Origin: Cyanophora paradoxa CCMP329 | Lineage: Eukaryota; Plantae; Glaucophyta | Reading direction: 5' to 3' | NCBI GenBank assembly: GCA_004431415.1 | Contig: QPMI01000103.1 | Coordinates: 124,001-188,000 of the forward strand | Length of the DNA stretch: 64,000 nucleotides | In this document: one piece after another, positions 21,001-64,000 of the stretch | How positions within the stretch are numbered: position 1 is the first letter of the stretch | Layout: every line of letters begins with the position of its first letter | Translations under genes and position numbers: made by a program | The notes under the pieces: model-generated | Seen by the model: the letters and a program-made list of their open reading frames with translations, nothing else | Database searches by the model: none | Told to the model about the DNA's origin: nothing

Positions 21001-22385
21001 AGCTAAAGCATCTGGCGCGCCCCTGACCCGCGGCAGATCCAGTACGTGGCGACGCCGCAGGGGACGGTGGCCTACGTCCCCGTGGGGGCCACCGCCCAGG
21101 CGGGAGCCCCCACCGGCGTCCAGGCGTACGCGCAGGCGCCGGCGCCGGCCGCGCCCCTCGCCACCCCGCCGGCCTCGCGTACGTCAGCGCCCCCGGCGTC
21201 GTCAGCTACGGGCAGGCGGCCCCGCCCACGAGGTCGCCCCGGCCCGCCCGGCGGCCGCCCCGCAGCAGCAGCAGCAGCAGCAGAAGCCGCAGGCGCCGGC
21301 GCAGCAGAGCTACGCGGCGGCGGTGCAGCAGTACGAGCAGGCGCAGGCGGCGGCGGTGCAGCAGGCGCAGGCCCAGCACGAGGCGCGCCTCCACGCCCAG
21401 CAGGCCCAGCAGGCCCCGCAGCAGCAGCAGGCCGCCCCCGCGGTCAAGCCCGTCCCATGGGCCGCCCCCGCCGCCCCCGCCCCGCCCCTGCCGCCGCGCC
21501 GGCCGAGGTGGAGGTGGAGGACGGCCCGGCGATTCCGACGATCCCCTCGGCCCGCGGCGTGGCCCCCGCGACGCCGCGGCGCGGCCGGCCGCCAGCGAGG
21601 CGCCCAGCCGCACCGCCAATATCCACAAGGCCTCCGTGCGCCCGCCGCCCCCGCCTTCCCGCTCGCGCGCGTCGCGACGGGGCGGGGCCGGCTGGGCGGG
21701 CGCAGGGGACGCTGGTGAAGCGCCCCGGCGAGGCGGCGGCCGCGAGCGACGACGACGACGACTATGGCGCGGCGGCGGAGGGCGCCGGCGCCTTCGAGCA
21801 CGACCCCGTGCGCCCCGCGAGCCCGAGCTGCCCCGCCCCCCTCCGCGCCGACGCGCGTCCAGATCGCGGCCCGCGCGAGCGCCGAGGCGGGCCTGGCGCG
21901 CCCGACCTTCCCCCACCCCGGCTCCACCCTCATCCAGTCCAGGCGGGCCCCAGACCCGGCCCTCCCCCGGCCCGCCCCGCCGCGCCCCTGACTCTCCCGC
22001 AGCGTCGTCCACACGCCGAGCGCGGGGCCGGCGCCGCCAGCGGGGCGTCGCGTACCACACCTACTCCGTCGGCTCCGGCGGCTCGTCCCACGCGATCCCC
22101 GCCCCTCTGGCGGCGGCGGCGGCGCCCCCGCCGGCGCCGCTGCCCGCGGCGCTGGCGCTGCCAGCGTCGGCCTCGTGGGTGCCCCCCGGCATGCGCCTGG
22201 ACGAGGCGGCCCAGGAGGCGGCGGCGGAGGAGGAGGAGGCGGGCGAGGGGGAGGGTGCGCTGGCGGGGGCGCGCGAGCCGATGGCGTGCCTCGCGGGGGC
22301 GGCCCTTGGCCTCGGGGAGGGCCTCCCGGGGGCGGAGGCGGAGCTGGAGGAGGCCGACGCGGAGCCCGAGCTCGCCCTCCTCTAG
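18054..22385 (+). CDS. Large Ala/Glu/Pro-rich low-complexity hypothetical protein (multi-exon)
   Basis: Candidate ATG at 18054 followed by a GT donor. Long codon-biased exons (WEEKLTEALKDV...; AAAQRVEEFQAQLARD...; polyQ tracts), ending EPELALL*. No family recognised; exact structure uncertain. Confidence 0.55.
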
Positions 22386-22539
22386 CCCCGCTCTGCGTGG
22401 CGCCCTGCCCCATCCAGCCGATCTCGAATTCGAATTCAGATGTAGAGTCAAATCAGAGACGCCTCTGGGGGAGGGGAGGGGAGGGGTGCCGGGACTAGCG
22501 TGCGGCTGCGGCTGGGACGCGAGCGCCCGCTCCCGGGCC

Positions 22540-25500
22540 TCAGAGCAGGTGGAGGGCGTGGCCGTGGGTCTCGGCGGCGAGAGCGAGGGCCCCGGCGACG
22601 TCGACGTCGACGTCCGAGTCTGCCCCGTCGGCGACGGCCGCCGCGTCCGCCGCAAGCTCGCCGGCCTGCGCCCCTCTCTCAGGCGTAGCCTGCGCCTCTG
22701 GCGAGCTCAGAGCGGGCGGGCGCACCTCTGCGGCAGCTTCTCCGTCGGCGGCGTCCGCCGCGCCGGCGCCATCCGCCGTGTACACAACGTAGGCGCCCCC
22801 CACGGCCGCGCCCGAGGCGCCGGCGTCCTCCGCCTGCGCATGCCGCGCGGAGTTGGCGAGAGGCCGGGCGTGGCCCGCCTGGGGCTGGGGCCAGTCGCGC
22901 GATCGGAGGCCGCGGCGCGCGCGCCTCGGCGACGTGCGGGGCCTCGTCGAGCTGGCCCCGCATCTGGAGCAGCTGGGCTGTCAACCTCGCCTCCTCAGAC
23001 TGCGGGGGTAAGGGGCGAGGGGGAAGGGGGGAAGGAGCTTCAGAGGTTGCAATTGAGGCGCGGCTTGGGCTCGCTCTTATATATTAGCTATATTGGCTTT
23101 AAAAAAGGCCGAGGCTCAGGCTATGATCGGCCGTTGCCGAGGGAGTTTCGGGGCCGGAGCGGAGAGGGAGGGGCCGCGGGCGGGGGTTGCAAAATTGCGG
23201 GGCGGGGCGGGCCCCGCGCACCGCGTCGGAGTGCCTGTAGGAGAGGAGCTGGACGCTCTGGCACCTGGAGAGGTCGCCGCCGGGCGCGAACGAGGTCCCG
23301 GTCAACGTTCTCCCACGCATGCTCAGCACAGACCGCGGTGCCGTCTGCTCCAAAGTCCTCGTGTCGGAGCACCTGCCCCGCCCCGCGCGCGTCCCCGCCC
23401 CCGGGTGAGAATTCGAATATTCAAGGGCGAAATTAATTCAAAGGGATCGAATTATATTTAAAAGAGCGGCACTCTTTGGCGGTCATCGCCTCGCCGAGGC
23501 GGCTCTTGCAGGCGTCGTCGGCGAAGCAGAGCCCAGTCGTGTTGAAGAAGAGCGCTTTGGCTGCGTCCAGCTTCGCCTGAGCCTGCTGCACCAGCTGCTG
23601 CGCCTCTTCGGCCTTCTGCGGCAGTCGCTCCGGGTCTGCGCGCGTTACGGCGTTTTATGCTTGGCCTCACGTGCTTTTTCTTCGCCGAAAAGCTCGCATG
23701 AATTATATATAGATCACGAGAGTATTGTTTCTCTACCTACTTCTATGACGTGATCTATTCTGCCACGCGTACGACGGCTACTGCCACTCGGCGGGCTAGT
23801 TTCTATTCTATTATTAATTCGCGACTATATTGCTGCGTGCATATATCGTGTTCGGCAGTCGCGGGGAGCACGGTTTTGCGGCGCAGAACCGGAGAGAACC
23901 TTCCACCGTGTTGGGATCACGGTTTATCAGTTCTCTCAAGCCGAGGATACCGGCGGATGCTTCCCCAGGGGTCCACATCAAGTGCTTTTTTCTGACGAGC
24001 TACTGCGAGTCTACAATTGCTGTACCCCTCTGGGTTAGTGCCCGATTTGAGGGGCAATCTGGCCCAGGCCTCTCACGTGGTCGGCCGCAGCCTTCACGTG
24101 ATTCGGAGGCGGGGTACAGCGACCGCTGGTAAGTACAGCGGTTTGAGACGGAGGCAGGAAATAGTTGGTGGGCCGGCGGGCTTCGCCCGCCGTGCACAAA
24201 CCACACCACTCACGGACTGTCCTCGCCTCTTCAATGGAGTACAGCACAGGAAAGCAGTGCGGATCGAGCTTTGTCGGTCATTCGACGAGCTTAACGCTTT
24301 CGAATTCTCGATCTCTTAATTACGTAAGAGCCTGCTATTCTCCATGTGCAATATTAATTACAAGGCCTGAGGTCGGCGTTATATGAAATTCGGATCTGGG
24401 CGTCTCCGCCGCCAGCTGCAGGCTTCTAGCCGCAGATCTAGATCCGGTAATTGCCACTATTCCTTATTATCCCTCTCGGGCTTGCGGTGCGATCGCTTTG
24501 GGCATCAATCGATGCCATACTAGCGATTTCAATCGCGTCGATCGCAATCGCGGGGTTGATGCCCGCGGCCCGCAAGCCATGTCGAATGTATCAGCCCGAT
24601 TTCGATTTTTGTCTCGAGCTCTTCTCCGGTCGCGAGTCGTCCGTGGCCATATATATGCATTCTGCAGCCTGTGGCTTGCTTCGAATTCGCAGCTCACGGC
24701 TTACAATTGCGAAGGACTCGTGCGATTAATCCACCCGATCCAGCTCATGAATTATATGAGCTTATAATTAAAGATCCGGATCCGGATGCAGAGAATTACT
24801 CCGACGGCCATGTTCAATGGCGGGGAGCTCAATCGCGAGGGCTGGACGTCGACATCGCGTGTGCGTGTATCCGGTTTGCGCCCTAGGCCTAGAGCTAGTC
24901 GGTGGCCATGGCACTACAGATTGGAGACTCCGGGTTCCGGTCTCCATGCCGATTTTTAATTATAGGCCCGTATATATACGTAGGCGTTCTGCGCATGCAG
25001 CGAAAGGCTGCAGGCTCCAGCTCGACTGCGAACCTCTTATGGCCCGGCTTAGGCCCCTGGGGGCTCCGAGCTCGACTGGGCATATGCATGAGCCTGGTTA
25101 TATATATAGCCATGAATGGGCCCCGGTTCTCGAAACGTTAACTATTGCAAGTTAATTGCAATTGCAAGTCCAGCGCCGACAGCGCGCGCGACTTGTAATT
25201 TGACCCTGACATGGCAGATCTGTCTCACGATCAGCTGCAGAGCTCGAGTCTGCCAGCTGCAGTACACGTGAACGTATACTTCACTGTATACGACGAGGTG
25301 TGGGAGGGTGGGTGCGCGAGGCGATTCCTCGCACAGATCGTAGTAAAAGATTGAAGAACAAGGCGCGCCGCCCGCGAGCGGGGCGGGCGGCGCGCCTCAG
25401 ACGGACTGGCGCTCTCAGAAGCGCCTTGCGTCAGTGATGCAATCAATGGCAGGCGGTACCCGTGGCGGCGTGTCGGACGGGTACGTCTCGCGTTCATAAT

Positions 25501-28500
25501 TAATATTTTGTTTTCTCGTGCGCGATCACGATCGCAGCCGAGCGCCGGCCGCGGCCGCGGTTACGATTTCCGGGCGCGCGCCGATAGCTGAGCTTGTCGG
25601 CTGTTTTGCACTGACGGCTTGCACAAATCTTCGTCTACGCTTACGCGCATACGACGTTTTATGCTTGGCCTCACGTGCTTTTTCTTCGCCGAAAAGCTCG
25701 CATGAATTATATATAGATCACGAGAGTATTGTTTCTCTACCTACTTCTATGACGTGATCTATTCTGCCACGCGTACGACGGCTACTGCCACTCGGCGGGC
25801 TAGTTTCTATTCTATTATTAATTCGCGACTATATTGCTGCGTGCATATATCGTGTTCGGCAGTCGCGGGGAGCACGGTTTTGCGGCGCAGAACCGGAGAG
25901 AACCTTCCACCGTGTTGGGATCACGGTTTATCAGTTCTCTCAAGCCGAGGATACCGGCGGATGCTTCCCCAGGGGTCCACATCAAGTGCTTTTTTCTGAC
26001 GAGCTACTGCGAGTCTACAATTGCTGTACCCCTCTGGGTTAGTGCCCGATTTGAGGGGCAATCTGGCCCAGGCCTCTCACGTGGTCGGCCGCAGCCTTCA
26101 CGTGATTCGGAGGCGGGGTACAGCGACCGCTGGTAAGTACAGCGGTTTGAGACGGAGGCAGGAAATAGTTGGTGGGCCGGCGGGCTTCGCCCGCCGTGCA
26201 CAAACCAGACCAAGGCCAGGCCTCAAGCAGCAGCAGCAGCTCAGCAAGTAAAAGAAGCTTTTAAGCTGAAGCACTCGATAGTACTTGTGGAACTATCGGG
26301 GGGCAGCATCATGGCAAGCGTATGGCGAGCCTGTGCGTGCTCACGATCAGTCGCTATAGCCATCTTAATAAAAACTTAAATTTAATAGTCACTGATCATC
26401 GGATCGATATATCGATGTCGCTCATCATGTGACAACGGATATGTATATTCCGAGATCGGAATCCGGGACTGCCGCGTTGACCGCGGCTGAAGCTTACGCT
26501 CGATGTATCGTAGAAAGTCCAACCTCGCGATCGAGCTCGCGATCGCACGTCAACGTCGCGAGCTCGAGACTGCGCATGCCGCCGTGCAGCTTGTCGCGAC
26601 TCGCGAGAGAGTTCACCGGCTGCATCTTTCGAGTTCGTGCGCCAGCTTCATTAGGAGCTTAAACAGAATCCGGCAACGCCCGTTCAATTCCGAAATTTTT
26701 AGTTCGAACGTTAACCCCCGCACGCGAACGCGGGCGATCTGATGCACGTGGCCGCAGTGGCCACTGGGGCACGGGGGCTCGTTGAGATCACGGTATTCCC
26801 CCCGTCGTAATTCATGATTGTGAGCGATACCATCGTTTTTGTTGCAACGTTCTAATTATAAGTTGACGTCGCCACGGGCGCTCGACACCATGTGGGCTCA
26901 TCATAGCATCGATGTTGCGAGAACTAGATCTAGAGCCCTCGGAGGGCAGGCACTCTAGATCTGCCGCTCCGCGGCCGATCTCGCTCATCGGGGTCGGAGT
27001 ATCGATATCGACATCATAGTATCGATAACGTAGAATCGATATCGATGCAGATCTAGATGGATTGCAATAGCGCAATTGCGCCGGCGCAGTGTACGTGTTC
27101 ATTTTCGTCGGACGGGGGTGCAATTAATGTTGCCGTGCGTGTTTGCATCGTTGGCAATTGGCTCAGTACCAGGCCCCGCGGTCGGGCCCTGATCATGATC
27201 ATGAGGGATTGGGTGCACACGTGCCGCCGGGCCGGCGTGGCCGCGCGAAAGACTCCGGGCAATTGCAATTGCAAGCATACTCAATATGACCGTCGGACCG
27301 AAATCATATACTATGATATGCGCGCGTTACTATAATTAATGCAGTGTATGATCATGTGCATAGGCATGAATTACCGCCGGGCCGGGGTCAATCGGCCAAG
27401 GCTTCCAAGATCACGCCGCAACGCCGTGACGCGCGCTGCGGCACGTCCGTGATCCTAGAGTCCGACGGTCCTGATGCAAGCTCACGCCGGCGCCGTCTGA
27501 GCTTGATTTCGACGCGTACGGCCGCCGGCCGCGGGCGCTTGATCATGAATTGTTGCCCGGAGGCTATATACAAATATATAGCTATATATATGACGTACGT
27601 ATACGTTGACGTCCGATCGCGATCCGAAAACAGCCTGGCAGCTCAATTTGCCGCGGCCGGCGTCCACGTCGCGTCGACGTACGCGTCGGATTACGACGGC
27701 CCCGGCCCTCCCAAGCTGAAGGGAGGACGTGCGCCGCCGGGCCGTGCAATTTTTGCAAGGGACGATCGCGAGATCGCCGGTTCGCGTTCGAATTCAGAAA
27801 TTGCATGTAATTATATAAATTGCCATAAGAGAGAGACTGAGGTCTCAAGGGCCGGGCCGGGGCCCGGCCCCGCCCGGGGCCGGGGGGCGCGAAGCTGTTA
27901 ATCGATTGCAAGATCTAGAGTCTAGATCCGGGTACTGCTGACGTGCCGACGCTGGTACGGGTATGCGCGCGCGCATGTGTCGGCGCATGTGTCTTATTCG
28001 ATGATATCGATCTGGACGATCAATGATCATGATTGCGATCGTATTGCGAGCAAGTTCGAGTGCTGCGCATGCGGCGCGCGATTCTGAATAAATTTTTGAT
28101 CATATTGCGCATGCGGCGCGCGATCGCACAATTGATCCTATTTGATCATGAATGGTTGATCATGATCATCGGATCGCACGCGAAGCTGATCATGAGTCAA
28201 GTCGACTCGGATCCGAACATCGGAATCCCGCGCCGCGCGCTCCTGTGTGCAGCGCACGTGTACCGCGGCAGTGCCATGGCCAGGTGTGCGGATCGTGGGG
28301 TCACTTCAAGATAGAGTGCATGTGTATGTATACGTATGCGCCACCGAAATTAAACCGCGGACCCGGGATCTGCTGACATAATCTAGATCTGCTGACCGCG
28401 CGCGGCGGGGTGCACGTGGACGCACTGTCACGCACACACTCGGCGGCAGAGCCGGTGTACATGTGCGCACCAAGCCCGCCGCGGCGCGGCGCGGCCGCCG

Positions 28501-31500
28501 GGCGTGCCGCACTGCAGCCGCACTGCGGCAGTGCAGACGTCGACTGCAGCTGTACGCGTGGAAAGCCTAGGGTGTCACGTGTGGTAAAAAATAGTTGCAC
28601 GTGGCCCAGAGCACGCGGCTGCCAGGCCGCCGGCGCCGGGCTGGCCACATGCACTGACCGCCATCGGTTACTAGTACCGGCTAGTGCTCAGCGGCTAAAG
28701 CTAGCGCTAGCGCTCGCGATCGCCCGGCGCCGCGCCGGCCGAAAGGAGCTCGAAGAAAAAAATATATTTTTTTTGGTGACGCTGCATGCGCATATGCACA
28801 TGCGTCCGGAGTCCGGATGGACGGAAAGTTGACTCGAGCTCGCAATCATATGCATGATCATGAATTCGAATATATACGAGAGCCGCGGCGGCCGGCCGCG
28901 CGCGGTGGGCGCGCGGCCTCGCCTAAGTTAACGTTCACGTCCGCGAGTTCGGCGTGCTCAGCGACCGTCGGACGGCTTGTCGGCCGGTACATGCATATAA
29001 TAATAATGGGGGCTCGGCAGCCTCGGCGGCTCCGAGGCTCACTAGATCTAGATCTGTTGCAAGTGCCAGATCTAGAACTTGTGGGCGTACTGCGGCGCTT
29101 ATATATAGTGGACAGCGATGTCGGGGGAGGGCAAGCCCGCAGGGTGCGCCCGCAGACCAGGCTATAGGTTCGCTGCGCGCGCACCCCTGCCGCATGCGCA
29201 GCCGTGCGAGAGCTAGGGTCAACAAGCCTTTGTATTGTAGAGCTCAGAAGCACGTACGCCTGCCACCAAGGCAGGCAAGGCGGAGGTGGCGCGGCGGGCC
29301 ACCTGGCCCAGGGGCTGCAAGGGAGAGGCGGCCACTAGTGCCGCCTCTTGGCCGCCCCGCGAGGCTGCGCCTGCGCCGCGGCGCTGGGCGCGCCGCCAAG
29401 AAGAGCCGCCGCAGCCGCCCCGCACTCTAAGACTGCGGGGTATATGTCAGGCGAGGCTGTGCCTGCGTCACGGGACGGGGGGGCGCGCACCCAGAAGCCC
29501 TTCGGCCGCTGCGCAGTCTGCAACTGCGGGGGGGGGGGGGGGGGGGGGGCCGCGTCAGGCGCGGCTTGCGCCGAAGAGGAGAGAGGGGCGCACCAAGCGG
29601 GTCGCCCCGGGCCGCCCCGCAGTTCGAAAACTGCAGGGGGCCGCGTCAGGCGCAGCTGCGCCTGCGCCGAAGAGGAGAGCGGGGTGCGCGCTGAGCGGGT
29701 CGCTCCGGGCTGCCCCGCAGTTCGAAACTGCGGGGGGGCCGCGTCAGGCGCGGCTTGCGCCGAAGAGGAGAGAGGGGCGCACCAAGCGGGTCGCCCCGGG
29801 CCGCCCCGCAGTTCGAAAACTGCAGGGGGCCGCGTCAGGCGCAGCTGCGCCTGCGCCGAAGAGGAGAGAGGGGCGCGCGCTGAGCGGGTCGCTCCGGGCT
29901 GCCCCGCAGTTCGAAACTGCGGGGGGGCCGCGTCAGGCGCGGCTTGCGCCGAAGAGGAGAGAGGGGCGCACCAAGCTGGTCGCCCCGGGCCGCCCCGCAG
30001 TTCGAAACTGCGGGGGCCGCGTCAGGCGCAGCTGCGCCTGCGCCGAAGGAGAGAGAGGGGCGTGCGCCGAAAGGGTCGCCCCGGGCCGCCCGGGCCCCGC
30101 CCCCCCCGTTCGTAAAACTGCGGGGGGGCCGCGTCGGGCGCGGCTTGCGCCGAAGAGGAGAGAGGGGCGCACCAAGCGGGTCGCCCCGGGCCGCGCCGCA
30201 GTCTGAAACTGCGGGGGCCGCGTCAGGCGAGGCAGCGCCTGCGCCGAGAGAGGAGAGGGGGGGAGCACCAAGAAGGTTCCCCCCGGGCCGCTCCGCAGCC
30301 GGAAACTGCGGGGGCCACCTCAGAGAGAGAGCGGGGCGCACCAAGAGGGGCCACCCCGGGCCGCTCCGCAGTCTGACATTGCGAGGGCCGCGTCAGGCGC
30401 GGCTGCGCCTGCGCCGAGAGAGGAGAGGGGAGGCGCACCAAGAAGGTTCGCCCCGGGCCGCTCCGCAGTCTGAAACTGCGGGGGCCACGTCAGGCGAGGC
30501 AGCGCCTGCGCCGAGAGAGGAGAGGGGGGGGAGCACCAAGAAGGTTCCCCCCGGGCCGCTCCGCAGCCGGAAACTGCGGGGGCCACCTCAGAGAGAGAGC
30601 GGGGCGCACCAAGAGGGGCCACCCCGGGCCGCTCCGCAGTCTGACATTGCGAGGGCCGCGTCAGGCGAGGCAGCGCCTGCGCCGAGAGAGGAGAGGGGAG
30701 GCGCGCTAAGAAGGTTCGCCCCGGGCCGCTCCGCAGTCCGAAACTGCGGGGGCCACCTCAGAGAGAGAGAGAGACCGGGGCGCACCAAGAGGGGCCACCT
30801 CAGGCCACTCCGCAGTCTGAGACTGCTGGGGCCGCGTCAGGCGCGGCAGCGCCTGCGCCAAAGCGAGAGGGGGGGCGCGCACGAGAAGGGACGCCCCAGG
30901 CCGCTCCGCAGTCCGAAACTGCGGGGGCCACCTCAGAGAGAGAGAGCGGGGCGCACCAAGAGGGGCCGCCTCAGGCCACTCCGCAGTCTGAGACTGCGGG
31001 GGCCGCGTCAGGCGCGGCTGCGCCTGCGCCGAAGCGAGAGGGGGGGCGCGTACCCGAGGGCTCGCTGAAGGCCGTCCGGCCGCCAGGATGCGGGCTGAGC
31101 CCGGAATTCATCTGAGCGGGGCACAGGTGAGCGCACCCTCAAGCCTGGCTTTCTAGACAGCTGATCGCCCGAACGCGCCCAGTTTGCTGCGTTCAGAATG
31201 TGAGCTGAGCTCAGTGAAGGCAGGGGCGTCGCGGGCGCACCGCGGGCAGGCCAGACTGGCTCGACGGCTGCCGCCGGAGCGGGCTCGACGGCTGGCGCCG
31301 GAGCAGGCTCAACGGCTAGCGCCGGAGCATGGGAATTACTGTGGGATGCAGCCATCAATCGGCGCCCCAGAAATGGAGGGAAAGCGTCCGCAGCCGTATA
31401 GGCGCGCGCGTGCCGGCAGGGAGGCCAGGCAAAACGGGAGGGGCTCTGGGCTGCAGCCGCTATTCGGCGCCCCGGGCCGCTAATCGGCGCCCAACTCCGC

Positions 31501-32690
31501 GGGGAGAGGAGGTCGCAGCCGCGAGGGCGCGCTTGCGGAGGCGATCGGGCGAGCCGGGTGGCCGCCCGCGCCATGGCCTGCGGATCGAATTCCGTGAATC
31601 GAACGATCCAAATGCAGGTGGACTGCCTCACGAGGGCGCGCGCGCAGGGGGGGGAAATCGCGCCCTGTCACGAACGTCGGAGCCAGCGGCGGGTCCGTGA
31701 CGCCGTGATGAGTCGGCGCGATCTCTGCGCGATCGGCTAATCGTTAGAATCTCGTCATGACTAGAAGCCGCTGGGCCGACGATGGCGGCCGTCCGCGGCT
31801 CTCAAGCATCGCACGAGCGGGAAAACGCGAGGGCGTGGCTCCGGGAGGGGGAGCGCGGGCTGGCGCTTACGACCGATGCCGACGAAATGCCGTCGTTGCG
31901 CGGATCGGGTCGTGGGTGCGAGGTCGGGCGCCGTGATTGCAGACAAGTCTGCGGGCCGCCCAGGCCGCGCGAAGGCCCACTGACCTTTTCCGGACGCGGT
32001 GGCTTCGCCGACACCGTGGTCGAACGCCGAATTTGGCGCTGGGACGATCGTCCGATCGTCCCACGCCGCGTCCGCTCTGTGCTGCTGCTGCTGCGCGAGG
32101 CGATTCCTCGCACAGATCGTAGTAAAAGATTGAAGAACAAGGCGCGCCGCCCGCGAGCGGGGCGGGCGGCGCGCCTCAGACGGACTGGCGCTCTCAGAAG
32201 CGCCTTGCGTCAGTGATGCAATCAATGGCAGGCGGTACCCGTGGCGGCGTGTCGGACGGGTACGTCTCGCGTTCATAATTAATATTTTGTTTTCTCGTGC
32301 GCGATCACGATCGCAGCCGAGCGCCGGCCGCGGCCGCGGTTACGATTTCCGGGCGCGCGCCGATAGCTGAGCTTGTCGGCTGTTTTGCACTGACGGCTTG
32401 CACAAATCTTCGTCTACGCTTACGCGCATACGACGTAGCGCGGCGGGTTAGGTCCAACTCGGGCCGGGCCAGGCCCCGCCGGCCGGGCGCTGGCGACGCA
32501 TGCGCACTCAAGCTCATCGTGAATCGTGGCTGCGGGCCCGGGGCGGAAGTCCCGAGATGCCGAGGGGCCCACGGATTCTGCCTCACAGGGACGTATGTGA
32601 AATGGCCGAGGGGGCTCGCCTCGTACACGTTAGCTACCAAGCTCATCCTGCTGAAATACAGATCGCGGGCGTTGAAGATGTACTGCTGAA
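22540..32690 (-). CDS. Hypothetical multi-exon gene with an intron interrupted by the 8.8-kb split-repeat element (5' end not determined)
   Basis: Exons ~32690-32508, 23635-23473, 23372-23222 and further exons to the stop at 22540 splice in frame (...PRFTMSL|NPERLPQKAEEAQQLVQQAQAKLDAAKALFF...AKE|CSDTR...) once the element is removed. Confidence 0.6.
23651..24203. repeat. Split repeat B, terminal copy (553 bp)
   Basis: Identical by eye to 25655-26207 (offset 2004); the ORF track gives identical peptides. Confidence 0.95.
25313..26207. repeat. Internal fused A+B repeat (circle-junction copy)
   Basis: 25313-25657 matches 32092-32436 and 25655-26207 matches 23651-24203; the two overlap at cgt 25655-25657. 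Confidence 0.95.
29520..31060. repeat. Tandem array of ~17 GC-rich ~70-110 bp units, each bounded by inverted repeats
   Basis: Unit: aactgcgggg-gccgcgtcaggcgc...gccgaagaggagagaggggcgcaccaag...ccgggccg-ccccgcagtt. Alternating subtypes give a 189-bp higher-order repeat on the left. Confidence 0.92.
31259..31330. repeat. 24-bp tandem repeat x3
   Basis: gctcgacggctg(c/g)cgccggagc(g/a)g repeated three times with small variations. Confidence 0.8.
32092..32436. repeat. Split repeat A, terminal copy (345 bp)
   Basis: Identical by eye to 25313-25657 (offset 6779). Confidence 0.95.
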
Positions 32691-33783
32691 CTCCGAATTC
32701 GGAATACGTTGCCGTCTAGATCTGGGAGGCTCTAGATCTGGCAGGTTGATCCGATAATCAGCAGCTGGTGCAGAGCCTTAGCTGCTTAGCAACGCGGGAC
32801 GCCGCAGGTCAGCCAAGGCAGCCGGTGATGTACAGTGCCAGTACCCCTGCCACGATCCGGAACTCACGGAGCTCACGGATCCGGAGCTCACGGAGTTTTC
32901 AGTGCGCATGCGGAAAATTGCAGGAAATTGGCGGGAAGTTTTGTTTTCCGGCGGGACATTCATATGATGATCGGGAATCTCAATTTTTCGGTTCATGTGC
33001 ATGCGCACGCTGCGGTCACGACTCACGGGTCACGGCCCACTCACGGGTCGCCGGGTCTTCTCATGAGTCATGATCATGATCAGATTCTTCTAGATCTCTG
33101 TACGCATGGTTTGCATTTTGTATTGTCTGCACTGCGGCATGCACAGTTTCATCTGGTTTATCTTGAAATCAAACATTTGGCTGCCTCTGCGGTCTTTAAA
33201 GACCAAAATATCTGTCCCTGGCCATCATGGCAGGGCAACAACTTGTGCGCCCCTCCCAGGCTGGGCATGCGCAGCCTCAACTAGACGCCGTGAAGACATA
33301 GGTAGACGCAAATCCATACATTCACAAGAACGATAAGAATCCGAAGGGCACGCTGGCGGATATATACTGTGCTGGAGTACATGTACATGTACAGAGACGT
33401 CGACTGTGCATGTGCACGTGGTCGGTGATCAGACAGAAATTTCTAGATCGAGCCGCGCGCAGGTCACAAGAGGGCGTCCGTTATGTAGTGCCGAACGTGC
33501 CCGCCCCTGGAGAAACGATTGGTCCCGGCCGCGACGAGGAGCCGCGGCGCGCGGAGCAACGGGGCGACAAGTGTACCTGCTTTGAGTTCCGGGGCGAAAG
33601 CTGCGCGCCCCGGCCTCGCGGTCGAGCGGGGCCGGCCCCAGCTCCGGCGCCGAGTACCTTCGATTCGAACTGATGCGAGCCCGCGGTCAGCAATTGCAAG
33701 TTAAGCATCAAGCGGATCGGAACTCGAATTTCTCTGTCCTTGGGGTTGCAATTGGGCCCGGAGGAGGCCTAGGCCTAGGGCGC

Positions 33784-36010
33784 TCACCGCGAGTGCTTCC
33801 GCCTCCGATCGCTGCGGTGTCGATCGCCGGGCACCGCCACGGGGGCGCTCGCCGGCGTGCCGGGCCGCCCCCCCTCCAGCAGCCTCTCCCGCGCGGCGCG
33901 ATCAAATCCAGCCCCGACCTCCGCGTCCCCCGCCACCTGATAGTCCGCCTCGCCCTCCCCCGCTTCCTCGTCAGGCTCCCGCGGCTTCCGGAGCCGCATC
34001 TGCCGCAGATCGAATTCGAAGGAATTTCAGAGAAAAGGATCGAAATTCGGGACGGGGGGCGGACGAGGAGCCAGGCGAGGGCGAGGAGGGCCCCGACGGC
34101 GAGCACGCCCGCCACCGCCAGCGGCAGCGCCTGCCCCGCCCGAAATAAGCGGCGGGGACGCGTGCGGGGAGGAATCCGCCCGACTAAGTCACTGAGCGGC
34201 ACGGGCGCGCCTGGGGGCTCTCGGGGCGGCGGTCCGTGACGAGGCCGAGCGCGTAGTACATCGCTGCGGCGCGCGCCGGCGCTCCGATCAGAATCCAGTC
34301 GCGAGCCCCGCCGGGACGGGCTCGGATCGGAGGCGGGGCGGGGCGGGGCGGGGCGGGCCGGTGAGGCCGACGTTGGTGAAGGAGGCGGTGAGGCCGTAGG
34401 CGGTGCCGTAGAGGCGCGGCGGGGCCACGACGGCCAGCGAGGGCCACAGCGCCGCCGGCGCCACGCAGAAGCCCGCCCCGATCGCCTGCAGCGTGGATCA
34501 CGCGCAGGTTCGTACGTTGGAGCGGGGCCGCCTCCGAATCCGGCCGCACCGCGAGGAGGGGTCCCGGGGGCAGGGAGGTGAGGGCCAGGCCCAGGAAGCA
34601 GGGGACCAGCAGCGCCGCCGCCCCGAAGACTGGCGCGTACAAAGCACTGAACGCAACCCCGAAGCAGAGCGCAGAAATGAGGCGGACCGATGTGGGGGAT
34701 GTGGGTGGCGAAGCGGTCGACGGCGAGGCCCACGAGCGGCAGCGCCACCTGCGGGGCTCCGGATCCGGCCTCAGAAAGGGGCGAAGGAAAGGCGGGGCAG
34801 GGCCGGGGGCGGGCCATGGAGACGGTGGACATGAGGGAAGTCGTGCGCGCCGCCCCCTCCTGCCTCCCCGCGTCAGCCCCGGCGTGAGCTCGGGGCCGGG
34901 CGTAGACCTGGGAGTAGCCCCACTTGTTCTGGAGGAAATCGCTGGCCGAAGGAATTCGCAATTGAGCGGCCGTGGGGCGATGGGGCACGCGCAGGCGCGA
35001 GGAGGGACAAGAGAGGGGGGAGGGGGGAGGAGGCGCACGGGGTGAAGGCCTGGAAGGGGAAGAGGCACGAGTAGATGACGGCTGCGCAAGCGTCGAGCCA
35101 AGATCTAGCATCTAGAGGGGCGAGGGAGGAACGGCCCGGGCGGGACGCGGGGGGCGGGGGCGCACTGGTGGCGGCGGCGACGAGGTAGAACTCGGCGGAG
35201 AGCGAGCCCAGCGCCTGCGCCGGGAGGGCCCCCCTGAGGGCGGCCTACGGGGCCTATGGGGGGCCGAGGGGGACCTTGAGGATGTCGTGCGGCGTCTCGT
35301 GGGCCTCCGCCTCCGCCTCCCCCGCCTCCCCCGCCTCCGCCCCCTCGGGCCCCTCCGTCCCTTCGGCACCCGCCTCCCTCTGCGCGCGCCGGGGCTCGGG
35401 GGCGAGCGGGGGTACGCGTGCGGGAGGCGCAGGACGCCGGCGGGGGCGGGCGGACGCGGTCGGCGAGGGCGTCGAGGGCGCAGAAGGCCGCCATCGCCAG
35501 CACCGACGCCCAGCACAGGCCCGCCCCTGCCCGAACGTTAACGTTGGTGCCGCCCCCTCAGAACCAGGTGGGCGGGGCCGCCGCGCCGAGGGCGAGGACG
35601 CGGGGGTAGGAGCCGAGGGCGCCGGCGAGGGCCGGCGCCGTGTTGAACGAGAGCACGTCCCTGCCGATCGCCAGGGGTCAGGCCGAGCCGTGGCCGCGGG
35701 GCGAGCCCAGGCCGGGGCGCGCTGCGGAGATATCCGGACCCGAGGCGGCCGGCCTGGGTGGCGAGGGCGACGGCGGTGGCGAGGCCGCGCCCCAGGAACC
35801 ACTTCGCGTACGCCAGGTCCAGCGCCACTGCCCAGCCCCCTAAGTAAGATGGTGGAGGGGGGGGCCGGAGGAGGGGGAGGAACAAAATAATCCGCGGGGA
35901 GGGGGGGGAAAGAGGGGGGTAGGGGTGGAGGGGTACCGTAGAAGCTCTCCGAGCCGAGCCTGGGGACGGGACCCGAGGCTAAGGGCGCATAGACGGAAGA
36001 GGGGGGGTTG

Positions 36011-37251: not shown

Positions 37252-40200
37252 ATGCCGCCGGCCGCTCAAGGAGTCGTCTGGGAGTCGTGGGGCCAGGTTT
37301 CGCGCGTGACCGGTGAGCCGCCTGATTTCGCGTTTTTCGTCGATCATCGCGGCCCGGTCCCCCGCCCGCCTTCGGTCCAACGTTACTTAACGCGCATCCT
37401 CAGACCATATTGCGGACATCCTGAGGAACTACAGCGACGGGACCTCGATTCTTTACGAGCTCATACAGAATGCGGATGGCGCGCTCAAAAGGCTTAAAGG
37501 GCTCTTAAGCTTCTAAACGAGGATCTTAGCTCATCCAGCGACCCCCTGAAATCGTGGTTTCCGGATCCTGCTGATTTCGCGCGCTTTTGTGCCATGCCGA
37601 TTGCGCAGACGCGGGAGCGAAGGTCGTTCGGTTTGTGCTGGACACGAACACGTACTCGAGCGATGGACCTATTCTCCACCAGAACATGGCCGCCTGGACG
37701 GGGTTCGCTTCGGCGTCGGCTCTGGATCAAATCTGCCTTCCGCGCGGCTCACCGCCTCTCGCGCCCCGCCCAGGCCGGCTCTTTATGCGTACAACGACGC
37801 GACGTTCACGGCTAGGGACTACGAGAGCCTCCAGATGATCGCGTGCATGGGAAAGGTGCTCGACTCCAGATCAAATCAGCGGTCGCACGACTGGGAATCT
37901 GACCCGCACGCAGGTTCAGGACCCAACGAAGACAGGTGTGCACGTTGTCCTTCTGCCCCGCCCGGCCCGCTGCGCGCCGCCTCTGATCATGACTCGGTAC
38001 CTGTGATCTCGGCGCGTCCGCAGGAAAATTCGGGGTTGGATTCAATAGCGTCTACCATCTCACGGACGTCCCTTCTTTCGCGTCGGGCGATTGCGTCGCT
38101 TTCTCAGGTGCTGGACCTTTCTCTGCCTCCCCCCCCCCGACCGCCCCCCCCTCCTCTTGAGCTTGCGCCCGCTGAAGGCTTTGCAGACCCCCACTGCTCC
38201 TTCGTGCACCCAGGCCAGCCTGGCCTCCGCATCCCGCTCTCCGAGGCTCGGCGCTTCCCGCAGCAGGTCCCGAGTTTCTTTACTCGACCTCTCTTTTTTC
38301 GTATACGTAGCCGATGCCGCCGCAGTTTGCTGCGTACGACATTCTGTCCAAGCTCCCCGGGGATGCGAGCTGCCCGTTCTTCCAGGGCCCCTCCTTCCAG
38401 GGGACCCTCTTCCGCTTCCCGCTCCGCTCGGCCGCCCTCGCCCAACGCTCCAACATCAAGCAGGAGCCCTGCACTCCCGAGGCCGTCACGGTGCCCCCCC
38501 CCCCCCCTCCCCCCCAACCCCCCCCAACCCCTCCCCCCCCCCCACCCCCACATACACACACCCACCCACCCACTCCCACCACCCCGCTCCCGCCCCAACC
38601 CCCCCCTCCCCCCCCCTCCCCCCCCTCCCCCCCCTCCCTCCCCCCCCCCTCCCCCCCCCCCCCCCCCCCCCCCCCCCCCGCGCCTCCCTTTCCTCCTGCT
38701 ACGTCCCCGCGCCTTTCCCGTTTGCCTTGGCCACCTCACTCGACCCCAATCGATCTCTTCGCCGTAGGAGCTTTTAAGCTCGCTGCGGGACCACGCGGCG
38801 AACGCGCTCCTCTTCCTCCGCTCCGTCGAGCGCATCGAGTGGTACGACCATCGCCCCGGTGCGCGCTCGCACTGCCCCTGCTCCCGCTCCGCTTATAATT
38901 AGTTGCAACCGCAAATGAAATAGTAAACATGGCGCAGGCTGGGACGCTCCGCGGCTCCGCTTCACGTCGGGCTTCTCGGCCGCCAGCCTCGCCGGCGTCC
39001 GCGACGCGCGGGGCGCTTTCCTGCGCCGCCTCCGCGCCCTCGGGACCAATCCCGTGCGCCTGTCGCGGTTATAATTAATCCTGCTTTACATTTTCGCAGC
39101 TGACGCACGCCACAGGTTGGGGAAGCGGAGCAGTACTACTGCGTTGCAGTGGTTCGAAACCTCGAGCGCTCCCGTACTTTTGCAAAGCTTAAGTGTCATT
39201 TTCGCGCAGATCGAGACGCTCGCCCAGGACGAGACGGGCAAACAGATCAACGGGGGCCAGGCGCCTCACCTCTGGACTGGGTCCTCCGAGTGGCACATCC
39301 TTCAGCAGGCTAGCCTGATTCACCTTGTCCATTCGTCTCTCTCTATCAATAAATTCGCGCGCTTGCTTGTTTGTATACGTAGCTCGGTGGTGGCAAGGCT
39401 TCGGAGATTGCCCGGGCTGCGCCGACGCAGCTGCGCCCCATCGGAGGCGTAGCACTCTGCCCCGGCCAGCGAGTTCAGGTTCGTATCGCTTACTTGTTTC
39501 AAGTTTTCGCGCCGCGCGCGCGCTAGAGCTTGTCGTTATTTTGCAATTTGGGCGCGCAGGGCCGGGCCTTCTGCAGCCTCCAGCTCCCCATCTCCACTGG
39601 ACTCGCCTTTCATGTGAACGGCTTCTTGTGCGTCTCATTTTGCGCCTTCGAATAAATATTCTCCGCCCTCTCACTGCGGGCGTCTCAGCGACATGCCCTC
39701 CAACCGCCGCCAGATCAACACTGAGACGCACGAGGCAGCAGTCCCCTGCCCCGGCCTTCGGCCTCGCTGAACCTCGCACCTTATGATTAAATTTGATTAG
39801 GGCCGCGAGGATCACGGCGCCACCTGGAACAAGGCCCTCGCGGCGGACGTCATGTGCGCCTTCAAGACAATAAAAAGCTAGAACGTTCGCGATCTGATCG
39901 CGGGCTACAGCGCCCCCGCCATGGTGGAGCTCTTTCGCCGCCTGCGCGGGACGGCCGCCCCGACGCAGGAGGCCGCCGAGGCCCTCTACGCGCTGTACCC
40001 GACCCCGCGCACCGTCGAGGGCGTCTACCTGCGCCTCCTCGTCCGCGAGGTCCGTTCGACTCTTCTGCTATCGAATTGCGCCAGTTCATTGCTTCGCGTT
40101 CTCGTCTGACGGGGATTTCGCACCGATGCCAGTTCTACAAGCGGGCCTGGTCGCAGCCGCTCTTCTACGCAAAGCCGTTGGTGGACGGCCCCCGCACGCT

Positions 40201-43200
40201 GCCCGCGCAGTGGGTGACGGGTGCGAGCGCCTGTTTCCGCTCGTCGAAGGTGCAAAAATGGCCGCTCGAATTCATGTTTCGCGCTGTGGCCTAATCTCAT
40301 GATCACTCCCTTTCAGACCGCAGTCTCTGCGCCCAAGGCAGAGGACCAAGTTCCGATGATGCAGGCCCGCGAAATTCATACACATCATTACCACGTGCAC
40401 AGAGGTATGCATTAAAATATTCCAGGTGGTCGAGCGAGTGGTAGCCCTCTGGGGCCTGCGCCTGGTGGAGGCGGACGAGATCCTCGTCGACTCGCTCAAT
40501 TCCGTGCGACTTACGGGCTTCCGACGTGACGTCGACTTTAAAATGCAGCCGACGCCGCGGCAGGTCTGTACCTGGAGCAGCCCGCAGGGCATCGTCCGCG
40601 AGGACTCCAATGTCTGCTCTAAATTTGTTTTCGCGGATGGATTTCGCGCTCTGACGCATATGTGCGCGCATGAGCAGGTTCTGAGCTCGACTCTGCTCAG
40701 GCGCGCTCTGAAAGAGCTGTGGCAAGGTGGCAACGGGCCGAAGGCGGACAACTTGACTCTGATTCTCTGCAACGCCGCCGTGCGCAATAAAACATTAACA
40801 CAGCCGATGGCGCAATATTACATTGATGTATTGCATCTTCGCCTCCGCCCGCGAGGGCAGAACAGACGTCGGTCGCATCGCAAAACTCTGACCGGAAACG
40901 CAGGACGTGAACCGCGCTCTCATCTACGTTGCGGCGGATCTTTCGAAGGCCCGCGATGACACTCTCATGGACCAGTTTCGCGGGGTGCATTACACCTGCG
41001 ATTGGTCGAATACATAATTAATGCACAACAATTAAGGTTCTGACGGTACCGGTTTACCTGACCTTCCGCACAGGTACCGCTGATAATCTGCGCAAACGGC
41101 CAGCTACGATCCTTCGGTGGTGCGCTGATTCCTGAAGCGCGAAAAAGATTCGTCCCGTGTCTAAAAAACTTGTGCGTCGTTTAGACTGCCGCTTCATCGT
41201 CCCCGATCAAGGCCCGGTCCTCGAGGTGCGCACTTCAGTAATAATAAATCAATTGCCGACGCCATCAAACCGCGTGCCGGCCGCGGTATCCCGCCTTCGA
41301 ATTCTCCATAGCTAACATTAACGTTCAACCAATCGCGCAACTCGCCTCAGCTATGCGGAAATTCCATCGCCGAGTTCATCAGCATCGAGCAGGTACCAAG
41401 ACGCCCTTGATTCTATATTTGCGTAGTCCTAAGCTGAGCTGCGAAAACTTCGCCAGGCCCAGGACGACCGCTCCGGCATCCTGTCCAACCCGCGGTAGAT
41501 AGCTTACGCGCTGCCCTTCGCGATCGCTGCGATCGCTGTTGCGAGCCTCTTGCAGATTCGGAGCGCCGCTCAAATTGGAGAAATTCACGCCAAAGCTCCT
41601 TCTCGAGCTGCTGCCGCGTCAACTACCAGCCAACTTCCAGAACGATTCGCAGGTCGGCCTCCGGATCCATGCAGCTGAACGCGACCCCGCTATTGCTCAC
41701 GACAGCATTTAATAATTTGAATTTGGTTTGCGCGTAGGTTCCACGTGGCTTGCCCATACTGCCAAGCGGCTCTCCGCTCGGAAACAGCTGGCTGGCCGCC
41801 TTCTGGAGCTACCTCGGACGCGCCTGCACCAAGGCGCGCGCTGCACGCTTTCGCCCGCGTATACGTGAGAAAGGCTTAGTCGTGCGCAGGAGGAATACAT
41901 CCCATTGTTCGGCCGCTGGGCGCTCGTTCCCACGAGCAACGGAGTTTTCATCCGCATTGAAAACGCCAGCTCCATCCTCGCTTCGGACAAATTTGGTCGG
42001 CAAGAAGCGCCCGCGAAATTAAACGAACCCTTCACAATTCGCGTGTCATTATACAAGATTCAAATCGCAGCACGCGGGATGCAGGAGATCCTTGTTAACG
42101 CGGGCTGTCTCGTCTTTGACCGTTCCGTGTGAGCCGCATATCCATAGCATGTGAATGCATGAAGAGTCAGTATTTTAATTAATATTTAAATTCGCCATGT
42201 TTAAATTTGCAGCGGGGGAGCCGTCGAGTCCATCATCACTCCGTTGCTCGCCACGGGCAACGCCGAGGGCCTCGTGCGCACTTTCAACGGTCCAGCCATT
42301 ATATTCTTGTTATTGTTTGACTTGTTCAATGTAGGTGAATGCACTTGCCGGCGTGGCGACGGCTGCCGCGAAACTGCCCGAGTCGAAGAGAATGGTTCGA
42401 ATTCGTAGCGCACGCACGATCGGATTTAAATTTCGCGGAATCTTACATAATTGCGGTTTCGCACCCGCAGGAAGTCCTAAGCTTCGTTGCTGGGGCTGGG
42501 ATCCAGTCTCTATCCACTACCTCCCGGGCCAAGCTGCGCGCCTTCCCCTTCTGGCGGCGTGCAGACGGCCAGGTTTTCGCATTTCGATTAGCATTTGAGA
42601 GTCCGAGATGCCGCTGACGCGCTCCTCAGCTGGGCGTCTGGAAGAAGGCAGGACATTTGTGCTGGAAGGGGCGTACCCTCCAAACGCCGCAGCGGGCCTT
42701 CAGGCGCGGCTTCTTAGTACTCGATGTTTCTCTTGGCAGCGTTTCGGACCGATTCGCAGATTGTGGCCCTTGCTCCATGTGAGGATGGTCGCATCTCCCA
42801 GCTTCTGATCGATCTGGGCGTCAAACGCTACACGTACCCGCTGGCGCGCCCAACAATGATCATGATATCAATAGCACCCCTGCAGGCCTCATCGATATCA
42901 TTTCATCCTTTCTGAACTATTTTCGCAGCTCGTTGCCGACCTCATTCTCCCGTCGATTGAACATTCCGTACTTGGGACTGCGGTGAGTTGACGTCCGCAC
43001 GAGGTTTATAGAAACGCTTCTTTTGCAGCTCAAAAGCATCTTGCAGCCTCCGCGGGGCGGCATGGCGAACGTGCAGCGCCTCGCGCCGCAGGATGTGCAC
43101 ACAATTTCGATGGCTCTTCTCTCCAACTTTACGGTACCGCGCTGCAGAGTTCCCGGGATTTCACGTTTTCGCACCATAAATTAAAAGTTTTCGCAGGCTT

Positions 43201-60700: not shown

Positions 60701-61321
60701 TGCACAGCATTTCAGCAATTTGAATAAGCTTTTTTAAGTCTCTTGAGTTTCATCACGCACTGCGATCGACGATGGTGGCAAAGCCTGGAGGAACAAGTCA
60801 TTAACATTATTCGAAATGAATATATCAGTCTATCGCAAACCTGATTGATTTGACGGGCCGGCTCTGCTCCAATGTTCCTCTCAGGAAGTTGAAACGCTCC
60901 AGGCTGAGCGTACACGTCAATGCGGGCGGGATATGCATGTCAATTAACGAGAGGGTACCGCCAGAGGAAAATGTGACGATAAGCCTGTGGGAGGACTTTT
61001 GTGGTCTTCAGCTGCGGCGACCTGTGTATGCAATATATATATAATTTCAGACAGCTGCACGCCAACTGAAGACTGCGCACGCATGCTCACTGCTGAATTG
61101 TAAGTGCCCTGCGTGGCGATGCTGCGACTGTGCTGCCGAACATGACGAAGCAAGCTTCTGCGATAGCAGAAGTGTTCACGGACTTCGGGCGGACAACGTA
61201 AGCAAATTCCGCCAGTGCACGACGATGAGAACGTGCATTGGGCGTCCGACAGCAGGAAATCTCGCCCAGGGACGACATCTCCGGGCACAGAAGCGGCTGC
61301 AGATCTAGATCGCCGCCCCAT
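57781..61321 (-). pseudogene. Intron-containing multi-zinc-finger ORF remnant, probably the N-terminus of the element's Rep/helicase transposase
   Basis: CSTCKRLFTDKFSFDRHIERAKC; CRQCSIICPSAPSLRQHEAAH; CDHEGCGWSGASASSLRKHKEKKH; TCACCAEY...FRLCQRCIPTLKSGDI, then an abrupt frame change. No HUH or helicase motifs remain. Confidence 0.6.
58974..60772. repeat. 605-bp tandem triplication
   Basis: Units start at 58974, 59579 and 60184; ORF-track peptides repeat at +605 and +1210; one substitution seen. Confidence 0.95.
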
Positions 61322-61652
61322 TTAGTGCGCAATCTCGCGAAGCTGCTAGCCTAGTAGCCGGAAGCAAGCACCGCCGCCAGTCGGAGAAGCCGTGCAGCGG
61401 AGTACTAGTGGCAACCGCGCGCGAGCGCAACAAAAGCGCCGGGCCGGGCCGCGGCCAACGTGCTCGGCTGCGGGCAGCGGCGCCCCGGCGCACGCAAAAC
61501 TGCGGTATAAACTCGATTTCGCAGACGTATTCGGCGCAGCAAGAGATGACAGTCTGGACGGCCTGGCGTCCTCGGCTGCGATCAGCGGCGCACTGCAGCT
61601 GCGGCAGCTAGCTATAGGCAGCGGTGCAAGCGGTTTTGCCGCAGTGCGGTGC

Positions 61653-62990: not shown

Positions 62991-63149
62991 TGCAAGCTCT
63001 ATCAAGCACGAGTGCCGGGCAGCGTGCTCGGCTGCGCGCAGCGGCGCGTGCTCGGTACGCAGTGCTGCGGTGCAAACTTGATGCAGTCAAAAGTAGTTCA
63101 GGCGTCACGGATACCGTGCGGCGTACGCGGCGCACTGCAAGGAATTCGA

Positions 63150-63365
63150 AGCGGAAATCTAGAGGAGACAGCTAGGAAGTACACACGCACGTGCACTGTG
63201 ATTGTATGCAGAACCGCGCAACGAAGAGCAAGGCGTACGCGACGCTCTGCGACGAAGCCGAAATCTAGAGGAGACAGCTAGGGAGAACTGGTTCCCAAGG
63301 CGTACGCGACGCACTGCGAGGAAGCCGAAATTTAGAGGAGACAGCTAGCTATATATATAGGGAGA
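63150..63365. repeat. Three spaced copies of gaaat(c/t)tagaggagacagctag in the element's subterminal region
   Basis: Copies near 63154, 63260 and 63327, each preceded by ggcgtacgcg.cgc.ctgc-like sequence. Confidence 0.75.
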
Positions 63366-64000
63366 ACTGGTTCCATGCAGAACCGCGGAAGGAAGAGCCC
63401 GAAGGTAGTGAAAAATTGGTTTTCCCCTCTCAGAACACTTCTCGCGAGTTCGAGAGAGCTCTCGCGAGCTCGAAAGCTGACCGGTCCACCGAGCCAATCA
63501 GATCGCGAATAACGGCACATTTTCGTTGCAAACTGGACCTCGAAAACGGCCTCATAGAAAACTTTTGGCTGAAGCGAGGGAACGGGAAGCAAGGGGGGGA
63601 AGACCTTCGGTCTTCTTTTCCCCCCTTGCAACTTGGCAGGAATGCCTGCGCCATGGCGGCCCTGGTGGATCCCCGTTGCAATGCTTCCCCACTAAAGGTG
63701 AAGGGTCCCCGGCATGTCGCTCGGACCGCGCGCGGCACTGCGTTTGTTCTGAAGACGTCGGCATCGCAGGGGCCGGACTCACGATCATTGTCGATAGCAC
63801 TGAACTCGTGCGTCTAGATCTATACCTATCTTGGCGCAACCCCGGCCGCACATCCACATTAATGTCTGCTTGCATTTCTGCAGGCCGTCTCTAATGGCGC
63901 TCCCCCGCTTGTCTACGAGCTCGATAGCGATCTCAACAGTGTAAGTTCAGCAAATTAGCTAGCGCTGTTTCCGTATGTTGACTCTGATGGCGTCCAAATT

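What the first reader, a model, noticed from the sequence alone, without database searches (positions are those of the whole stretch)
23651..32436. 8.8-kb split-direct-repeat element with a preserved circle junction, inserted at CGT inside an 89-nt intron
SEEN: two repeat pairs (345 bp and 553 bp) arranged A1-body-B1-A2-1.1 kb spacer-B2 on the minus strand. The left end (ttacgg CGT tttatgc), internal junction (catacga CGT tttatgc) and right end (catacga CGT agcgcgg) share the same 3-bp core. Removing the element restores a normal 89-nt GT...ctaac...CAG intron (32507 to 23636) whose flanking exons join in frame. KNOWN: split direct repeats with a short core shared by termini and target typify PAT/Ngaro/TOC1 tyrosine-recombinase retrotransposons; Chlamydomonas TOC1 is non-autonomous and also has a spacer and an internal tandem array. 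INFERENCE: identical repeat copies point to a young, large non-autonomous family mobilised in trans through a circular intermediate, probably undescribed in this lineage.
Basis: partly seen in the sequence, partly recalled or inferred. Interest (0 to 1): 0.8.

Follow-up and report, generated by a model that had tools for sequence, protein, structure and literature searches.

The report
Gene-less split-repeat jumping element
This is a young 8.8-kb copy of a small family of protein-less mobile elements built like Chlamydomonas TOC1 (tyrosine-recombinase retrotransposon type); it is a clean example of a known kind, and the claim that it sits in an intron is unproven.

Summary
On the + strand the layout is X1 (23651-24203), a 1.1-kb spacer, Y1 (25313-25657) overlapping X2 (25655-26207) by CGT, a 5.9-kb body with a 1.5-kb tandem array, and Y2 (32092-32436). 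X1=X2 at 553/553 and Y1=Y2 at 345/345. CGT stands at both ends and once at the internal junction, with no other target duplication.

Short-read contigs from two independent DNA runs bridge the left flank into X. Contigs break exactly at 23651, 25313 and 25657. Repeat and spacer contigs are roughly 5-20 times deeper than the flank and carry variant forms. So this is a low-copy family with fixed boundaries, not a mis-assembly.

No ORF matches Pfam and nothing matches Rfam. The best reading is a non-autonomous PAT/TOC1-type split-direct-repeat element of the DIRS order. Earlier notes name the genome as Cyanophora paradoxa.

The 89-nt intron is arithmetically right but not distinctive. It has no RNA or homology support.

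Movement in trans and the circular intermediate are inferred, and no autonomous partner was found here. The scan has already noted such elements on other DNA of this genome (s1-558982, s1-515261, s1-509662). Verdict: new member of a known kind, of modest interest.

The parts
23651..24203 (.).
   Evidence: 553/553 identical to 25655-26207. A contig in both DNA runs starts exactly at 23651, at 506 and 364 depth against 45 and 18 in the flank.
24209..25312 (.). 1.1-kb spacer between X1 and Y1, non-coding
   Evidence: No Pfam hits. Contig depth is 5-8 times the flank, and the contigs carry substitutions and indels against this copy. It holds 23 X-rc(X)-X 9-mers against 0.23 expected.
25313..25657 (.).
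   Evidence: 345/345 identical to Y2. One 345-nt contig spans exactly 25313-25657 in both DNA runs.
25648..25664 (.). Internal Y|X junction (the 'circle junction'), CATACGA-CGT-TTTATGC, with one CGT shared by Y1 and X2
   Evidence: unique in the window, 0 expected.
25655..26207 (.).
26213..32091 (.). 5.9-kb non-coding body
   Evidence: No ORF over 200 aa outside the GC-rich array. No Pfam hits and no Rfam hits. The loose ends at 24208 and 25313 read as this body's two edges.
29543..31050 (.). Internal tandem array, units of about 91/170/189 nt, each holding two hairpin-forming palindromes
32092..32436 (.).
23636..23650 (-). The target reads TACGG-CGT against the element's TACGA-CGT.
   Evidence: The intron status is unsupported.
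32437..32507 (-).
   Evidence: This junction was not covered by the one read-laying run.

Best explanation
[quoted passage not shown] It carries no genes. Its cis-acting parts are the terminal pieces X and Y and the internal Y-CGT-X junction, which equals its two ends joined. Inferred mechanism: an RNA that lacks the extreme ends is reverse-transcribed by enzymes supplied by an autonomous relative. The internal junction then serves as template to rebuild and join the ends into a circle. A tyrosine recombinase crosses the circle's CGT with a CGT in the target. That leaves the element flanked by CGT on both sides and no other duplication. Shown here: the anatomy, the lack of coding capacity, the multi-copy status and the family-wide fixed boundaries. 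Inferred: the RNA step, the circle, the helper and the direction of transcription.
For: The repeat pairs are exact: 553/553 and 345/345. One CGT is shared at the internal junction and one stands at each end, with no further target duplication. In two independent DNA runs a flank contig at single-copy depth runs 30 nt into X with no differences. Contigs start exactly at 23651 and span exactly 25313-25657. So every assembled copy branches at the same bases, with CGT before X and after Y. Depth is 5-8 times the flank in the spacer and 7-20 times in X and Y, and variant forms of X and of the spacer exist. This copy's X and Y each differ from the majority contig at a few sites while its own two copies are identical, as expected if the repeats are co-generated at each round. 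There are no Pfam or Rfam matches. Literature: PAT elements are defined by A1-B1-A2-B2 split direct repeats (PMC4157794). A species-specific trinucleotide at the circle junction is proposed to define integration and to flank the element (PMC7192593). TOC1 is a non-autonomous DIRS element (PMC9940879) with an internal tandem array (title of Day and Rochaix 1991, cited in PMC3623635).
Against: No helper element with these ends was found here; only unchecked earlier notes say intact PAT-like elements exist in this genome. There is no RNA evidence: RNA-labelled runs hold 4% or less of the words, and only one diverged 59-nt piece was laid. The right junction and the full 8.8-kb order were not spanned by any read. 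The repeat geometry alone cannot tell a retroelement from a DNA circle element, nor tell the strand.
Confidence: 0.75

Rival explanations
1. It is a tandem pair of two separate mobile units, X-spacer-Y (2.0 kb) and X-body-Y (6.8 kb). Each moves as a DNA circle through a tyrosine recombinase (Crypton-like or excised DIRS-like). The second circle integrated at the CGT at the end of the first, so the 'internal junction' is simply the seam between two elements.
For: Each unit is bounded by CGT-X...Y-CGT. The contig graph fits either reading: X has two successors and Y has two predecessors. X depth is about twice the spacer depth under both models. Short inverted arms (GCATA / TATGC) flank the core at the junction, as at recombinase sites (weak, about 0.001 per offset).
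Against: X1=X2 and Y1=Y2 are perfectly identical while differing from the family majority, which fits co-replication in one element better than two independent arrivals. Earlier follow-ups on the coding relatives found the mid-element junction to be family-wide. TOC1 and the PAT elements provide a precedent.
Confidence: 0.12
2. It is a rearranged or tandem LTR-type element (LARD/TRIM-like) whose LTR is Y+X, truncated at both outer ends.
For: Y+X forms an 895-bp unit between two internal regions, and TOC1 itself was first described as an 'unusual LTR arrangement'.
Against: Both outer truncations fall exactly at the Y|X seam, and that seam is a family-wide branch point. Y+X does not start with TG or end with CA. 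There is no 4-6-bp target duplication. There are no gag or pol remnants.
Confidence: 0.04
3. It is an assembly artefact or a non-mobile local duplication.
For: No long read was examined, and the contigs used cannot span the 345- and 553-bp repeats.
Against: The left junction is present at single-copy depth with no differences in a 2019 run and a 2024 run. All internal edges are seen as contigs or loose ends. The repeats are multi-copy with exact boundaries. Twenty DNA runs hold the same share of the stretch's words.
Confidence: 0.03

Closest known systems
TOC1 of Chlamydomonas reinhardtii (non-autonomous DIRS/PAT-type element; Day and Rochaix 1991; PMC9940879)
   Same: It encodes no proteins. 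Its terminal repeats are split, with a full internal copy of the joined ends. A unique spacer lies between the internal junction and one terminal piece. It carries an internal tandem array. It occurs at low copy number. TOC1 is recorded inside genes, where it is removed by alternative splicing (PMC3623635).
   Different: This element is larger (8.8 against about 5.7 kb), with longer repeats (345 and 553 bp) and a much longer spacer (1.1 kb; about 0.1 kb in TOC1 from my own recollection). The host lineage is different: a glaucophyte per earlier notes, not a green alga. Sequence relatedness was not tested because no TOC1 sequence was at hand.
PAT-like and Ngaro elements (split-direct-repeat tyrosine-recombinase retrotransposons; PMC4157794, PMC7192593)
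   Same: A1...B1A2...B2 geometry. A trinucleotide is shared by the junction, the ends and the target. There is no ordinary target-site duplication.
   Different: Those elements encode gag, RT/RNase H, sometimes a methyltransferase, and YR. This element encodes none of them, so it cannot be placed by protein phylogeny.
12-kb and 8.7-kb non-coding split-repeat elements noted earlier in the same genome (s1-515261, s1-509662, s1-558982)
   Same: Same genome, same architecture, satellite cargo and lack of target duplication, according to those notes.
   Different: Their sequences could not be compared here, so whether they share X and Y, the CGT core or a helper is unknown.

Membership tests
DIRS order, PAT/TOC-type split-direct-repeat retrotransposons | Split direct repeats A1...B1A2...B2 with A1=A2 and B1=B2 | tested here: met
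   345/345 and 553/553 identity in the required order.
DIRS order, PAT/TOC-type split-direct-repeat retrotransposons | The internal junction equals the joined termini; a shared trinucleotide flanks the element; no other target duplication | tested here: met
   CGT at 23651, 25655 and 32434. Contig ends show CGT before X and after Y in all assembled copies.
DIRS order, PAT/TOC-type split-direct-repeat retrotransposons | Encodes RT/RNase H and a tyrosine recombinase (with or without a methyltransferase) | tested here: not met
   20 ORFs scanned against Pfam gave no family, and there are no long ORFs outside the array. So it can only be a non-autonomous associate, filed by architecture and not by protein.
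DIRS order, PAT/TOC-type split-direct-repeat retrotransposons | An autonomous partner with the same terminal sequences | not testable with these tools
   The rest of the genome cannot be searched by sequence. A protein look-up and one protein search were blank, and a metagenome scan for the junction was blank. Only unchecked notes report intact PAT-like elements.
DIRS order, PAT/TOC-type split-direct-repeat retrotransposons | Multi-copy, with the same boundaries in other copies | tested here: met
   Depth is 5-20 times the flank. Contig break points lie at 23651, 25313 and 25657 in two runs, and variant copies are present. The flanks of other copies were not seen.
DIRS order, PAT/TOC-type split-direct-repeat retrotransposons | Replication through RNA and a circular cDNA | not testable with these tools
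   No RNA contig lies on the element apart from one diverged 59-nt piece.
TOC1 family proper | Sequence relatedness to Chlamydomonas TOC1 | not tested
   No TOC1 sequence was available. The resemblance is architectural only.
LTR retrotransposon derivatives (LARD/TRIM) | Complete LTRs at both ends, TG...CA termini, a 4-6-bp target duplication | tested here: not met
   The outer repeats are complementary halves, not whole units. The ends read CGTTTT... and ...CGACGT, and there is no duplication beyond CGT.
Spliceosomal intron as insertion site | Transcript or homology evidence for the flanking exons and their junction | tested here: inconclusive
   No RNA contig on 23440-23635, no Pfam hit, no relatives, and the GT..AG in-frame test is not distinctive.

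The most novel reading that the evidence does not exclude
X and Y may form a general-purpose mobilisation cassette: any DNA between CGT-X and Y-CGT is moved by a resident tyrosine recombinase. On this reading the 8.8-kb element is a heterodimer of two independently mobile modules that can fuse and separate at the CGT seam. It would choose targets that resemble its own junction (TACGNCGT) and would spread satellite arrays around the genome.
Probability: 0.1. Interest if true: 0.6.

Novelty: new member of a known kind. Interest (0 to 1): 0.3.

Why it matters
It adds a well-delimited, apparently recent TOC1-like parasite of tyrosine-recombinase retrotransposons outside the green algae. The genome paper for this organism left 11.5% of the DNA as unknown repeats and does not mention such elements. 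The exact ends, the CGT core and the possible extended target give concrete handles for annotating this family. They also allow a test of the trinucleotide-integration model, which has little experimental support. It does not change what is known about how such elements are built.

Tried and rejected
- Pfam scans of 20 element ORFs and 7 flanking ORFs found nothing.
- An Rfam scan of 23000-33000 at E 0.1 found nothing.
- An exact-protein look-up of the ORF that starts in Y2 was not on record.
- A word search with the unspliced ORF 32308-32715(-) gave no hit, not even to itself. The protein route to other copies is therefore closed.
- A metagenome scan for the 24-nt junction gave 0 hits.
- A findings search by sequence was blank.
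- Day and Rochaix 1991 is not held.
- I considered a link to a noted DNA transposon with CGT...ACG ends and a 3-bp duplication (s1-603032). I rejected it because no register of this element's ends gives both those termini and a matching duplication.
The frame across the putative intron was only computed in a script from the window's own letters.

Full report
**What is there**

Repeat finding and a self-BLAST of the window show two direct-repeat pairs in 23.6-32.4 kb. An exact comparison gives:
- Y: 25313-25657 = 32092-32436, 345/345 identical.
- X: 23651-24203 = 25655-26207, 553/553 identical, with a mismatch at 24204 and divergence from 24209.

On the + strand the order is X1, a 1.1-kb spacer, Y1 overlapping X2 by three bases, a 5.9-kb body, and Y2.

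- Left end: TTACGG|CGT|TTTATGC.
- Internal junction: CATACGA|CGT|TTTATGC.
- Right end: CATACGA|CGT|AGCGCGG.

The empty site would therefore read TTACGG-CGT-AGCGCGG, and nothing else is duplicated. The 17-nt junction string is unique in the window. A tandem array with units of about 91/170/189 nt fills 29543-31050. Each unit visibly holds two palindromes able to form hairpins.

**Not an artefact, and multi-copy**

All are held as short-read contigs.

- In both DNA runs a flank contig (depth 45.1 and 18.3) runs from 23000 to 23680 with no differences. It bridges the insertion point by the 30 nt that a k=31 graph allows.
- A contig then starts exactly at 23651 (depth 506 and 364).
- One 345-nt contig spans exactly 25313-25657 (depth 304 and 218).
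- Spacer contigs have depth 229 and 140.

Contigs end where the assembly graph branches. These break points therefore say that, in every copy deep enough to be assembled, the sequence diverges immediately left of CGT-X and immediately right of Y-CGT. That is what a fixed element end with a CGT contributed by each target predicts.

The flank contig does not stop at 23653, so neither run holds an empty allele at detectable depth. The loose ends at 24208 and 25313 read as this element's own X-to-body and body-to-Y edges.

The depth ratios suggest about 5-8 spacer equivalents and 7-20 X and Y equivalents. The tool warns that summed contig depth is no copy number, so I call this only a small family.

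Variant forms exist:
- An X in which 24028-24106 is replaced by 40 other letters, about as deep as the form seen here.
- An X lacking 23681-23885.
- Spacer contigs with substitutions and indels against this copy.

This copy's X and Y differ from the majority contig at a few sites (for example 23886, 25419 and 25455), while its own two copies of each are identical. Identity is thus higher within the element than between elements. That fits repeats generated together at each round of replication, although subfamily structure or gene conversion could also give it.

**Coding capacity**

Outside the GC-rich array no stop-free stretch exceeds 194 aa. Twenty ORFs on both strands gave no Pfam family. 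Rfam gave nothing. The element is non-coding as far as these tools can see.

**What it is**

The anatomy matches the split-direct-repeat elements of the DIRS order:
- PAT elements are defined by A1-B1-A2-B2 repeats (PMC4157794).
- The closest single precedent is Chlamydomonas TOC1, a non-autonomous DIRS element (PMC9940879) with an 'unusual LTR arrangement' and an internal tandem array (title of Day and Rochaix 1991, as cited in PMC3623635; the paper itself is not held).

I therefore read this as a TOC1-like non-autonomous element, mobilised by the enzymes of a coding relative through a circular intermediate that recombines at CGT. The RNA step, the circle and the helper are inferred, not shown.

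The strand cannot be decided from the repeats, because the same geometry reads on either strand. Analogy with TOC1 (long body first, short spacer last) gives the minus strand. Analogy with the coding PAT-like elements that earlier agents describe in this genome (short gag module, junction, long pol module; s1-512741 and others, unchecked) gives the plus strand.

**Two small extras at the site (weak)**

- The target's left side resembles the Y end beyond the core: TACGG-CGT against TACGA-CGT, with further GCGC similarity one base out of register.
- The junction carries 5-bp inverted arms, GCATA and TATGC, around an 8-nt centre that holds the CGT. The same match appears as 8/10 between the two termini at a one-base offset (about 0.001 per offset by resampling).

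Both fit a recombinase site and a preference for junction-like targets, but a single insertion cannot establish either.

**The intron claim**

The arithmetic is right: 89 nt, GT...CTAAC...CAG, and an open joined frame of 136 aa. It is not distinctive. 51 of 162 GT..AG pairs on that strand, and 52 of 98 on the other, give open frames of 100 aa or more across the site.

The flanking ORFs have no Pfam hit. The unspliced upstream ORF has no relative in the word search. No contig of two RNA-labelled runs lies on the proposed 3' exon, though the tool notes that this is no proof of absence. I score the claim as 'cannot tell'.

**Rivals**

- The main rival is a tandem pair of two separate X...Y units that move as DNA circles. 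The contig graph cannot exclude it. The perfect identity of both repeat pairs and the reported recurrence of near-identical composite elements elsewhere argue against it.
- An LTR-type origin fails on the termini, on the target duplication, and on the family-wide seam at Y|X.
- A mis-assembly is unlikely given the independent runs.

**Organism and earlier findings**

Earlier agents name the genome Cyanophora paradoxa. I did not verify this independently. The roughly 100-Mb contig totals of the DNA runs fit the published genome. Its paper reports 29.4% repeats, 11.5% of them unknown, and does not mention such elements. One literature search for Cyanophora with DIRS found nothing relevant.

The scan has already noted elements of this kind on other DNA of the same genome: an 8.7-kb element with the same layout (s1-558982, not followed up), and two 12-kb satellite-carrying ones judged TOC1-type (s1-515261, s1-509662).

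**Verdict**

The transposon reading is supported. The intron and the 'large family' are not. It is a new member of a known kind and of modest interest.

Noticed in passing
window 24209-25312 and 26213-29300 (also the flanks 22000-23650 and 32437-34000): Nine-letter words of the form X, reverse complement of X, X (X = 3 nt) are hugely enriched. The spacer holds 23 against 0.23 expected and the low-GC body 63 against 0.96, about 20 per kb. X holds 1 and the tandem array 1. At 24990 this copy has TGC-GCA-TGC where other family copies lack exactly 6 nt, so the process acted after the copies diverged. This agrees with earlier notes on a genome-wide 'inverted triplication' process. The near absence in X may mean constraint on X.
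   Followed up: partly
window 39356-45053 and 52103-57430 + 63630-64000: A unit of at least 5.7 kb with lower GC is present twice in the same orientation at 99.9% identity. The second copy runs off the window. It overlaps the stretch that another note reads as a sacsin-type gene (s1-567287), so that reading may include repeat DNA.
   Followed up: no
window 57431-63629: A 6.2-kb insert interrupts the second copy of that unit. The first copy shows the empty site (44683-44686), and the insert is flanked by a 4-bp duplication, AACT. It carries three 605-bp tandem units (58974-60772) and dense AGCCTG/CAGGCT palindrome arrays at 61.6-63.0 kb. It has no split direct repeats. It is a different mobile element with a clean filled-versus-empty comparison.
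   Followed up: partly
window 23933-23991: In both DNA runs and in one RNA-labelled run (depth 13, under 90% alike) a contig joins an unrelated 115-131-nt sequence to this part of X. A diverged relative that shares part of X exists and may be transcribed.
   Followed up: no
window 29543-31050: Each unit of the tandem array holds a 9-bp stem with a 5-nt loop (CCCCGCAGT...ACTGCGGGG) and an 18-nt perfect palindrome (CAGGCGCAGCTGCGCCTG), separated by GA-rich runs.
   Followed up: no
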